Shown here: piece by piece, positions 8,489 to 10,014 of the stretch
Position numbering within the stretch: the stretch's first letter is position 1
How the letters are laid out: each line of letters starts with the position of its first letter
Origin: Diadema antillarum
Lineage: Eukaryota
DNA: 64,000 nucleotides
Assembly: GCF_040938485.1 (NCBI RefSeq)
Contig: NW_027272710.1
Coordinates: 1 to 64,000 of the forward strand
Reading direction: 5' to 3'
The notes under the pieces: model-generated
Database searches by the model: none
Told to the model about the DNA's origin: nothing
What the model saw: the letters and a program-made list of their open reading frames with translations, nothing else
Program-made: the position numbers and the translations under genes

Positions 8489-8588
8489 GTAAGTAGAGTA
8501 TGAACTGCAATATGGCTGACAGTGCTCAACTATATAGGAGCCCATGTAGTACAATATATAGTAGGATGGAAGGCGTTGCTTTATTAGT

Positions 8589-8638
8589 GACTTAGCTGGA
8601 CAGTCTGTTTCGGCCGAAGCCTCGTCAGCAACTAAATC
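8589..8638 (-). ncRNA. Minimal type I hammerhead ribozyme in the pLTR
   Basis: Exact reverse complement of 9890-9939: CUGACGA-GGC(UUCG)GCC-GAAA-CAGACUG-UC with a 10-bp stem I. Confidence 0.85.
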
Positions 8639-8861
8639 AGTTTCTTGTTAAAGTACAGTGTAAGACATACGGCTCTGGTGCACTCAAGCAAGCAAATAAA
8701 AGATACAAAAGATACAAAAAATACATGCACGTGGCTACTTAACAGCACAATAAAGTTGACAATGACACTGGCACTGGGCTTAAGGCAGGGGTAATACACT
8801 TGTATGGCTTAGATTGTTACATGTGGAAGCCGGGGAGGTGGGGGGGGGGGGGGGGGGGAAG

Positions 8862-9854
8862 CTAACCAAGCTCTGCGAGGGAAAACTTTTTCTTATGTTT
8901 ACATGTTGAAATGAGTTCTGTTCTTGAGTTCAGGATTGCTGGTTTCTTGGCCGTGATGATGTGGTATTTCTCCCATAGACACAGGTTGCAGCGGTTTGTT
9001 TTGGGCGAGTACGGTTGGGCGTGCCTGACGATCCTCCATGTGAGTGAGTAGGGAGTGCCTTCATCCTTCAGTCCCCAAATGTGTTTACTCAGTTCTGTCT
9101 GGTGTCGCTTTTCCCTGTTTGTGAAGCTTGCCTTGTGTGTGGCATATCTGGATTTGAAGGAGGTTGAGGTAAGGCCGATGTATATTTTCTCATCGTCTGG
9201 GGTCGCTACCTTCGCTTCGTATATGATGTTCCTGGCTGTGCATTTCCCAGGGATCGGGCAATCTTCCTTCTTTCTGCAGTTGCAGGAGTCCCTGGCTTGC
9301 TCTTGACTGTTGTTGATTATTTTGTTGTTGTGTGCCTTTGTTATAGTATGCATATTGTCCATGCAGCTGTAGCTTACTTTCAGAGTGTTCCTGTTGCATA
9401 TCTTGCTGAGCTGGTGTCCTTTAGGGAAGTGGTGCTCGACGAGGGCTAGGAACTTCCTCCCGATGTTTGTTTTAACATGTCTGCTGAACGGGGGGTTGAA
9501 CCACGTTATGTTTCGTTTCCTTTGGTGTTGTCTTTCTTTTCTGCAGCTGTTGGTCTCTTTGGGGGTGTACGTCAATGTTGTTTGGTGTCCCGCCTCGTGG
9601 AGTGCGTTCTCGTAGTCTGGTTTGGTGCTGTTGAAGATTTCCTCGTTGCTGGAGATGTTGGATAGGCGGGTCTGGATGGACTGTGGTATTCTCTTGGTGA
9701 CGGTGGGTGGATGATTCGATTCTGTATGTACGTATAGGTGCGAGTCCTCTGGCTTCGAGTACGGTTTGAATTCCTTCTTGGTGAGGTCGAATGTGACATC
9801 GAGGAAGTCGACGATGGTGTCATTTGCACTGGCCGTTATCTGTAGCCCGAACTC
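8862..9854 (-). pseudogene. Truncated Penelope-like RT thumb plus GIY-YIG endonuclease ORF (330 codons, no internal stop)
   Basis: The frame of the 8862-9575 ORF stays open upstream: EFGLQITAS..VDFLDVTFDL..YVHTESNHPP..RLSNISS, then RNITWFNPPFS, CNCRKKEDCPIPGKC, NIIYEAKV..KIYIGLT..RYATHK, CNLCLWEK and CKH. There is no ATG start. A Naiad-like subclade is only a tentative guess. Confidence 0.9.
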
Positions 9855-9889
9855 TGTGTGTACTTTAATGTGTACTTTAACAAGAAACT

Positions 9890-9939
9890 GATTTAGTTGC
9901 TGACGAGGCTTCGGCCGAAACAGACTGTCCAGCTAAGTC
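9890..9939 (+). ncRNA. Minimal type I hammerhead ribozyme in the inverted pLTR copy
   Basis: GAUUUAGUUG-CUGACGA-GGCUUCGGCC-GAAA-CAGACUG-UC-CAGCUAAGUC. Stem I has 10 bp (2 GU), stem II has 3 bp with a cUUCGg loop, and all core nucleotides are intact. Predicted cut is after 9929. Confidence 0.85.
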
Positions 9940-9975
9940 ACTAATAAAGCAACGCCTTCCATCCTACTATATATT

Positions 9976-10014
<39 letters not shown>

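What the first reader, a model, noticed from the sequence alone, without database searches (positions are those of the whole stretch)
8547..9981. Two intact hammerhead ribozymes facing opposite ways at the ends of a Penelope-like insertion downstream of IL17 copy 1
Both copies keep every core base (CUGACGA, G-C, GAAA, GUC). Stem III, ACAGACUGU, is self-complementary apart from the central A, which fits the dimer-cleaving minimal hammerheads known from Penelope-like elements. The inversion puts a ribozyme on each strand. The minus-strand copy (8589-8638) is co-oriented with IL17 about 3.4 kb past its stop and could cut read-through RNA. A transcript spanning both ends would form a 111-bp duplex. 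Effects on IL17 are inference.
Basis: partly seen in the sequence, partly recalled or inferred. Interest (0 to 1): 0.72.

Follow-up and report, generated by a model that had tools for sequence, protein, structure and literature searches.

The report
Truncated Penelope retroelement with twin hammerheads
The two opposed hammerhead ribozyme motifs are real, but they are the normal end pieces of a dead, head-to-head insertion of a Penelope-like jumping gene in a TA repeat, and nothing shows any effect on the nearby IL17 gene.

Summary
Observation confirmed. Window 9871-9981 (+) is a 111-nt inverted copy of 8547-8657 (-). Each arm holds a complete type-I hammerhead: 9889-9940 (+) and 8588-8639 (-), cutting after 9929 and 8599. 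A descriptor scan finds only these two in the window, against 0.015 expected.

The insertion (8491-9981) is a 5'-truncated copy of a 2.5-kb Penelope-like element of the Hydra clade, lying on the minus strand. A short head-to-head inverted copy of its own 3' end is attached, and the whole sits in a (TA)n tract. This arrangement, the one-sided 53-nt "tail" and the hammerhead in the pseudo-LTR are all published features of these elements.

Nine hammerheads from seven elements (49-72% protein identity to this one) keep the core. Helices I and II co-vary. Helix III is always a 4-5-bp quasi-palindrome with a 0-2-nt centre, which fits cleavage as a dimer.

The IL17 idea has no support. A signal for ending the transcript lies about 630 nt past the stop. 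Each strand carries only one sense ribozyme. An RNA spanning both arms pairs 111 of 114 arm bases, which buries the ribozyme. Read data could not be obtained.

The scan has already noted this kind of feature repeatedly elsewhere in this sea-urchin genome. Ordinary; low interest.

The parts
8443..8487 (.). (TA)n, left half of the target microsatellite
   Evidence: A paralogous uninterrupted (TA)n lies at 37250-37329.
8491..8543 (-). 53-nt 'tail' extension at the 3' end of the main copy (unit positions 2628-2680). It is absent from the right arm.
   Evidence: BLAST against the intact copy in L031. One tailed and one untailed end were seen in 7 of 7 independent insertions.
8544..8657 (-). Left arm: the 3' pseudo-LTR segment of the main copy (unit 2514-2627)
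8588..8639 (-). Hammerhead motif in the sense of the main copy and of IL17. Core starts at 8628, C17 is at 8599, cleavage falls at 8599|8598.
8658..8861 (-). 3' untranslated part of the element, between the ORF stop and the arm
8862..9857 (-). Open remnant of the element's ORF: 331 codons plus stop, equal to residues 373-703 of the intact 703-aa protein. It holds the distal RT region, the CxCX5C linker and the GIY-YIG endonuclease. The catalytic YRDD is missing.
   Evidence: 98% identity to the intact ORF
9859..9870 (.). 12-nt filler at the head-to-head junction. It repeats the first 10 nt of the right arm.
9871..9981 (+). Right arm: a 111-nt inverted, 5'-truncated copy of the element's 3' end (unit 2514-2624), without tail
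9889..9940 (+). Hammerhead motif on the plus strand. Core starts at 9900, C17 is at 9929, cleavage falls at 9929|9930.
9982..10014 (.). (TA)n, right half of the target microsatellite
12005..12577 (-). IL17 paralogue 1 (190 aa, single ORF). Context only.

Best explanation
Window 8491-9981 is a young, dead-on-arrival insertion of a Hydra-clade Penelope-like retroelement (PLE) into a (TA)n microsatellite downstream of IL17 paralogue 1.

Structure: the main copy lies on the minus strand. It is 5'-truncated at unit position 1326 of 2513 and so lacks the RT catalytic centre. A 111-nt inverted copy of the element's own 3' end is joined head-to-head to its truncated 5' end.

How it arose: this is the usual product of PLE integration. 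cDNA synthesis appears to start from both sides of the cut target, once at the 'untailed' site and once at the 'tailed' site. That two-sided start is inferred.

The hammerheads: every copy of the 3' end carries the family's hammerhead, so the inversion gives one ribozyme per strand. The ribozyme is a conserved part of the element's pseudo-LTR. Its helix III is a 4+4-bp quasi-palindrome that can form only between two copies. It is therefore built to act when two sense copies meet, as in tandem pLTR-ORF-pLTR transcripts, probably with help from the element's protein. This too is inferred, from published work on other PLEs.

At this locus: no strand carries two sense copies, and a spanning RNA would lock the ribozyme into a 111-bp duplex. 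The pair is most likely inert and has no role in IL17 expression.
For: Identity of the element:
- The insertion aligns at 98% with unit 1326-2680 of an intact copy (L031), plus the inverted segment 2514-2624.
- The remnant frame is open and 98% identical to residues 467-703 of the intact 703-aa ORF.
- The intact ORF has over 3,343 relatives of about 700 aa.
- In an alignment of 117, the published Hydra-clade marks are 92-100% conserved: RW(K/R), ADKT, CxCX5C, Y..YIG, CxxC, CxH (against PMC8557442 section 11).
- The unit is 2513 bp, targets (TA)n, and has tandem and inverted copies.

Head-to-head is the rule for this family:
- At least 8 loci show it, with varied truncation points.
- 7 of 7 independent insertions have one tailed and one untailed end.

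The hammerhead is real and of dimer type:
- 2 hits in the window against 0.015 expected.
- 64 exact core copies in the genome, 0 for the control.
- Nine hammerheads beside seven related ORFs keep the core, co-vary in helices I and II, and always have a 4-5-bp helix III with a 0-2-nt centre.
- The double-hammerhead fold scores -37.7 kcal/mol against -35.4 for two monomers. The monomer prefers an inactive fold: -17.7 against -12.9 to -13.9.

No sign of a local role:
- 111 of 114 arm bases pair arm-to-arm in the spanning RNA, and the duplex scores -210 kcal/mol.
- The first AAUAAA/AUUAAA lies about 630 nt after the IL17 stop.
- A paralogous IL17 unit has the empty (TA)n.
Against: - Both activity and silence therefore remain unshown.
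- No Rfam hammerhead family reaches threshold.
- Pfam finds nothing in the 703-aa ORF, and GIY-YIG is only weak in the remnant (E 0.019).
- The clade assignment rests on motifs read against a paper's description, not on a tree with reference sequences.
- Folding energies ignore co-transcriptional kinetics and proteins.
Confidence: 0.86

Rival explanations
1. One reading: the minus-strand hammerhead trims IL17 read-through transcripts, giving copy 1 an alternative 3' end.
For: The ribozyme is on the same strand as IL17, and its cleavage site lies 3.4 kb past the stop. The core is intact.
Against: AAUAAA/AUUAAA signals lie about 630 nt past the stop. The ribozyme needs a second sense copy, and this locus has none. 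The antisense arm is transcribed first and would pair with the ribozyme at -210 kcal/mol. Published PLE hammerheads cleave poorly in vitro (PMC4209133). The same family sits at 64 or more other places with no link to any gene.
Confidence: 0.03
2. The inverted arms make a hairpin RNA when transcribed through. This hairpin feeds a small-RNA pathway that silences the PLE family, or IL17 copy 1 in cis.
For: A spanning RNA is predicted to form a 111-bp near-perfect duplex with a 1.2-kb loop. The family looks recently active: it has identical intact ORFs.
Against: There is no evidence of transcription and no small-RNA data. The structure is a by-product of integration seen at many loci, so nothing suggests selection for it here.
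Confidence: 0.07
3. It is a non-autonomous 'retrozyme' that yields circular RNA by double hammerhead cleavage.
For: Animal retrozymes carry similar type-I hammerheads and are thought to derive from PLE pseudo-LTRs (bioRxiv 10.64898/2026.07.22.740005).
Against: The two ribozymes are on opposite strands, so no transcript has two sense sites to excise a unit. The interior is a PLE coding remnant, not a short non-coding monomer.
Confidence: 0.01
4. It is an assembly artefact or a chance motif.
For: Inverted PLE structures are known to trouble assemblies (PMC8557442).
Against: The same structure, with the same truncation point and flanks, is present at 99.6% identity on contig C21. Many independent loci show the same architecture. 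The expected number of chance hits per window is 0.015.
Confidence: 0.01

Closest known systems
Hydra-clade Penelope-like elements (Craig et al. 2021, PMC8557442)
   Same: A single ORF of about 700 aa in a unit under 3 kb. C-terminal GIY-YIG. DKT instead of DKG, an RWK-type motif, a CxCX5C linker, CxxC and CxH near the C-terminus. Insertion into (TA)n. Canonical hammerhead in the pseudo-LTR. Partial tandems, inverted 5'-truncated copies and a one-sided tail.
   Different: The host is a sea urchin, whereas the echinoderm named in the paper's text is a sea cucumber. The tail here is 53 nt rather than the quoted 30-40 bp. Placement by tree was not done.
Dimer-dependent hammerheads of PLEs (Cervera and de la Pena 2014, PMC4209133; Lunse et al. 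2017, cited in PMC6765202)
   Same: Type-I topology. A helix III too short to close, with palindromic sequence. Location in the flanking repeats. Pairs on opposite strands a few hundred bp apart were already reported.
   Different: The motif here has a long helix I (11 bp), a short helix II (3 bp with a UUCG loop) and a 4+4-bp helix III palindrome. It is therefore closer to the 'canonical' metazoan form than to the helix-III-less min-HHR, which has a long helix II and a short helix I.
Poseidon PAc of Anolis carolinensis (Frangieh et al. 2024, PMC11167929)
   Same: In PAc the tail lies between two reverse-transcription start sites. The hammerhead is not needed for insertion in vitro, and its cleavage is helped by the protein. 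No RNA-seq ends were found at the cleavage site.
   Different: A different PLE clade. In PAc the ribozyme overlaps the ORF start; here it lies 181 nt upstream of the ATG.
Animal non-LTR retrozymes
   Same: Type-I hammerhead with a short palindromic helix III, and derivation from PLE pseudo-LTRs.
   Different: Retrozymes are direct tandem repeats that give circular RNA. Here the two copies are inverted and flank a coding remnant.

Membership tests
Hammerhead ribozyme, type I | Conserved core: C3 U4 G5 A6 N7 G8 A9, G12 A13 A14, A15.1-U16.1, and H17 (not G) | tested here: met
   Both copies read CUGACGA ... GAAA ... GUC with C17. The 10.1-11.1 pair is G-C.
Hammerhead ribozyme, type I | Helices I and II flank the core and are kept by compensatory change in relatives | tested here: met
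   Nine hammerheads from seven elements have different sequences, yet helix I pairs over 4-11 bp and helix II over 3-10 bp. Three of them have U.U at 10.1/11.1, and one copy (L038:36) has an A.C mismatch there.
Hammerhead ribozyme, type I | A helix III that positions the cleavage site | tested here: inconclusive
   ACAG-A-CUGU cannot close on itself. Between two copies it forms 4+4 bp (-6.9 kcal/mol), and the double hammerhead scores -37.7. This is prediction only.
Hammerhead ribozyme, type I | Score at or above the gathering cut-off of an Rfam hammerhead family | tested here: not met
   No hits at gathering score. The best is RF03152 at 21.9 bits against 56.3. This is expected for motifs without a closed helix III.
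Hammerhead ribozyme, type I | Self-cleavage 3' of position 17 | not testable with these tools
   Needs an in vitro or in vivo assay. No reads could be laid.
Penelope-like element, Hydra clade | A single ORF with RT followed by a C-terminal GIY-YIG endonuclease, in an element under 3 kb | tested here: met
   703-aa ORF in a 2513-bp unit. The RT motifs FD..FYPSI and YRDDG, and Y585..Y598-I-G600, R609 and H613, are conserved.
Penelope-like element, Hydra clade | DKT in place of DKG, an RWK motif, a CxCX5C linker, and CxxC and CxH around the conserved E and N | tested here: met
   A114-D115-K116-T117 (92-100%). R37-W38-K/R. C564, C566, C572 (99-100%). C662/C665, E668, N682, C691/H693 (all at least 95%).
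Penelope-like element, Hydra clade | No CCHH motif in the endonuclease domain | tested here: inconclusive
   No conserved Cys or His lies between the GIY and YIG segments. No reference alignment with canonical PLEs was available.
Penelope-like element, Hydra clade | Insertion into (TA)n | tested here: met
   (TA)n lies on both sides, and an uninterrupted (TA)n lies at the paralogous site.
Penelope-like element, Hydra clade | Pseudo-LTRs from partial tandems, inverted 5'-truncated copies, a one-sided tail, and a hammerhead in the pseudo-LTR | tested here: met
Penelope-like element, Hydra clade | Grouping with reference Hydra families in an RT phylogeny | not tested
   Repbase references and the paper's supplements were not available.
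Animal non-LTR retrozyme | Direct tandem repeats with same-strand hammerheads that release a circular RNA | tested here: not met
   The two motifs are on opposite strands and flank a coding remnant.

The most novel reading that the evidence does not exclude
IL17 paralogue 1, the only one of the four tandem IL17 copies in the window with this insertion, may make read-through RNA that is shaped by it. That RNA would either be cut at the minus-strand hammerhead, paired in trans with another family transcript, or folded into a 111-bp hairpin that is processed into small RNAs. Either route would give a copy-specific layer of control over an immune cytokine gene.
Probability: 0.03. Interest if true: 0.6.

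Novelty: new member of a known kind. Interest (0 to 1): 0.15.

Why it matters
It matters little in itself. It is a well-resolved example of how Penelope-like elements leave mirror-image hammerhead pairs in animal genomes. It warns against reading such pairs as gene regulators. The family-wide data gathered on the way are useful for people who study PLE integration and ribozyme function. These are the constant dimer-only helix III across elements with 49-72% protein identity, and the finding that one insertion end always has the tail and the other never does. Both agree with published models and do not overturn them.

Tried and rejected
- Rfam at gathering score over the whole window gave nothing. 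In E-value mode only a sub-threshold RAGATH-1-hammerhead match appeared.
- Pfam on the intact 703-aa ORF matched no family. A PDB sequence search gave only noise.
- ESM Atlas gave leads only: clusters of about 700 aa from Cnidaria and Ctenophora, and GIY-YIG/RVT_1/HTH_animal clusters.
- Expression could not be tested. No RNA run is on record for this stretch.
- Two relatives' contigs could not be fetched.
- The supplements of Craig et al. and the Lunse et al. paper are not held.
- The strict hammerhead descriptor missed most relatives because helix I is bulged or 10.1/11.1 is U.U. A relaxed reading found them.
- The retrozyme, artefact and chance-motif readings were rejected, as set out under the rival explanations.
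- I built no consensus of the element. One natural intact copy (L031) served as reference.

Full report
**1. The observation**

The stretch holds an inverted repeat with arms 8544-8657 and 9871-9984, 114 nt, 99% complementary. Against an intact copy of the same repeat family, the right arm is exactly 9871-9981 (111 nt, 100%).

Each arm reads as a type-I hammerhead:
- an 11-bp helix I;
- CUGACGA;
- helix II GGC-UUCG-GCC;
- GAAA;
- helix III ACAG-A-CUGU;
- GUC.

C17 is at 9929 on the plus strand and 8599 on the minus strand. My own descriptor required the core, at least 5 bp in helix I and at least 3 bp in helix II. It finds these two sites and no others in the 64-kb window, on either strand. 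Two hundred composition-matched random windows gave 0.015 hits on average.

The best sub-threshold match is RAGATH-1-hammerhead, 21.9 bits against 56.3, with the core correctly aligned. That is no surprise for a motif whose helix III cannot close.

**2. What the insertion is**

The genome is 1.75 Gb in 2,963 contigs. I did not check that myself.

The 114-nt arm has at least 173 candidate copies, and the 40 that were scored are 97-100% identical. The 30-nt ribozyme core occurs 64 times exactly, 32 on each strand, against 0 for the reversed control.

A locus on contig C677 (L031) shows the full unit:
- the period is 2513 bp;
- there is an intact 703-aa ORF;
- the arm lies in the spacer, with the ribozyme core starting 181 nt before the ATG and 221 nt after the stop.

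The window insertion aligns at 98% with unit positions 1326-2680 on the minus strand (9858 down to 8491). The inverted 111-nt piece, unit 2514-2624, lies at 9871-9981.

The remnant frame 9857-8862 is open for all 331 codons. It equals residues 373-703. It therefore lacks the RT catalytic YRDD (residues 346-349) and everything upstream. The copy was dead on arrival.

**3. The family**

Pfam sees nothing in the 703-aa ORF, and GIY-YIG is only weak in the remnant (E 0.019). The large protein search finds over 3,343 relatives of about 700 aa at 47-72% identity. Named ones come from a bivalve (Solemya velum) and a bryozoan (Watersipora subatra).

In an alignment of the query with 116 of these, the following are 92-100% conserved:
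- R37-W38-(K/R);
- A-D-K-T at 114-117;
- the RT motifs FD..FYPSI and YRDDG;
- C564-x-C566-x5-C572;
- Y585 ... Y598-I-G600, R609 and H613;
- C662-xx-C665, E668, N682, and C691-x-H693.

These are the marks that Craig et al. 2021 give for their Hydra clade of C-terminal-endonuclease PLEs. That clade also has a length under 3 kb, insertion into (TA)n and readily detected canonical hammerheads (PMC8557442). I had no reference sequences, so the clade assignment is by motif and not by tree.

**4. Why there are two opposed ribozymes**

Head-to-head pairs are the rule in this family. Among the loci fetched, the minus-oriented arm always precedes the plus-oriented one. The inner truncation points differ from locus to locus.

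Both outer ends could be read in seven independent insertions: C1822, C526, C770, C112, C1626, C506 and C677. In all seven, one end stops at unit 2621-2624 and the other at 2680-2687. So a 53-nt tail is present at one end only.

Craig et al. describe exactly this: an inverted 5'-truncated copy next to the main copy, and a tail often at one end only. Frangieh et al. 2024 show for an Anolis PLE that the tail is the stretch between two reverse-transcription start sites (PMC11167929).

I infer that the two target DNA ends each prime a cDNA, one from each start site, and that the cDNAs are joined head to head. The 12-nt filler at 9859-9870 repeats the first 10 nt of the arm. That looks like a template-switch stutter. 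The mechanism is inference; the anatomy is shown.

Cervera and de la Pena 2014 had already reported hammerhead pairs on opposite strands a few hundred bp apart.

**5. Target site and age**

(TA)n flanks both sides.

The window holds four IL17 paralogues, all on the minus strand: 12577-12008, 26831-26256, 39866-39297 and 54933-54355. The right flank of the insertion has an 89%-identical paralogue at 37330-37901. That paralogue is preceded by an uninterrupted (TA)n at 37250-37329. This serves as an empty site, so the insertion came after the IL17 duplication.

Contig C21 carries the same insertion with the same flanks at 99.6% identity. It is probably the other haplotype or a very recent duplicate. 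That rules out a local misassembly.

**6. Is the hammerhead a real, conserved ribozyme?**

I fetched DNA around seven related ORFs (49-72% identity to this one) from at least five assemblies. I found nine hammerheads in the same place, 64-231 nt from the ORF ends.
- The core is constant.
- Helix I and helix II differ in sequence and length (helix II 3 to 10 bp) but remain paired. One copy (L038:36) has a mismatch at the pair next to the core.
- Position 17 is C here and A in the relatives. Both are allowed.
- Helix III is ACAG-N(1-2)-CUGU, ACAGAUCUGU, ACUC-A-GAGU or ACUU-U-AAGU. That is always 4-5 pairs around a centre of 0-2 nt, too small for a hairpin loop.

This conserved feature fits the dimer model known for PLE and other metazoan type-I hammerheads.

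Nearest-neighbour energies agree:
- the double hammerhead of two copies scores -37.7 kcal/mol, against -35.4 for two separate monomers;
- the monomer prefers an inactive fold (-17.7), in which C3-U4-G5 pair with part of helix III, over the active fold (-12.9 to -13.9).

Cleavage itself is untested.

**7. The IL17 idea**

The stop is at 12005, the ribozyme 5' edge at 8639 and the cleavage site at 8599. Three things speak against an effect.
- Only four AAUAAA/AUUAAA signals lie on the minus strand between the stop and the ribozyme. The first two are at 11373 and 11369, about 630 nt past the stop, a normal 3'-UTR length.
- The locus has only one sense ribozyme per strand, while the architecture calls for two.
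- A read-through RNA meets the antisense arm first, 2.0 kb past the stop. In the predicted fold of the 1,441-nt RNA, 111 of 114 arm bases pair arm-to-arm. The duplex scores -210 kcal/mol.

Expression could not be examined. I worked beside those places afterwards.

**8. Comparison and verdict**

Everything here matches published PLE biology: the element, the target, the head-to-head structure, the tail, and the position and dimer-type design of the ribozyme.

This scan holds 39 notes with the words 'Penelope hammerhead' in this same genome. Several follow-ups at other loci reached the same reading.

The finding is a correct observation of an ordinary feature. It is a new member, in a sea urchin, of a known kind, and interest is low. 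The remaining open question is general to PLEs and not specific to this locus: what the ribozyme does in the element's life cycle.

Noticed in passing
window 12577-12008, 26831-26256, 39866-39297, 54933-54355 (all minus): Four single-exon IL17 paralogues (93-98% protein identity) lie in a tandem array with a spacing of about 13-15 kb. Only the first has this PLE insertion downstream.
   Followed up: partly
window 37250-37329: An uninterrupted (TA)n lies at the position paralogous to the insertion site. It acts as an empty site for the PLE insertion.
   Followed up: yes
G000:C21:3240809-3245248 (L010, L028): The same locus, including the insertion and its flanks, is present at 99.6% identity in reverse orientation on another contig. 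Together with the 1.75-Gb assembly size, this suggests both haplotypes are assembled separately.
   Followed up: partly
L001-L030 (seven independent insertions on C1822, C526, C770, C112, C1626, C506, C677): In every head-to-head insertion with both ends read, one outer end stops at unit 2621-2624 and the other at 2680-2687. The 53-nt tail is always on exactly one side (7 of 7).
   Followed up: partly
window 9859-9870: The 12-nt filler at the head-to-head junction repeats the first 10 nt of the right arm. It looks like a template-switch stutter.
   Followed up: no
G000:C53:240900-240965; C263:63219-63285; C529:1528268-1528334: These are extremely short head-to-head pairs: two exact ribozyme cores on opposite strands with only 6-7 nt between them. 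Both copies are truncated right at the 5' edge of the hammerhead.
   Followed up: no
L036:3723, L040:1270 and 3718: Three related hammerheads have U.U instead of G-C at positions 10.1/11.1, followed by a long helix II (6-10 bp). This is a recurrent variant within the clade.
   Followed up: no
L034/L035 (GCA_012271395.1 contig WLWI01018207.1): Two 708-aa ORFs of a 72%-identical relative lie in direct tandem 300 nt apart. There is one hammerhead in each spacer, the arrangement in which two sense ribozymes share one transcript.
   Followed up: partly
window 8829-8859: A long G run on the plus strand, with about 22 uninterrupted G at 8838-8859 (a C run in the element's sense), lies in the 3' untranslated part of the insertion. 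I did not check whether its length varies among copies.
   Followed up: no
window 31625-31756: Another hammerhead-like repeat was noted by the scan (s1-208721). My type-I descriptor does not pick it up, so it has a different layout and belongs to a different family.
   Followed up: no
one search hit list: Most relatives of the 703-aa ORF sit on metagenome or Logan contigs only 2.2-3 kb long, about one element unit. This suggests assemblies collapse at the pseudo-LTR or capture unit-length transcripts.
   Followed up: no
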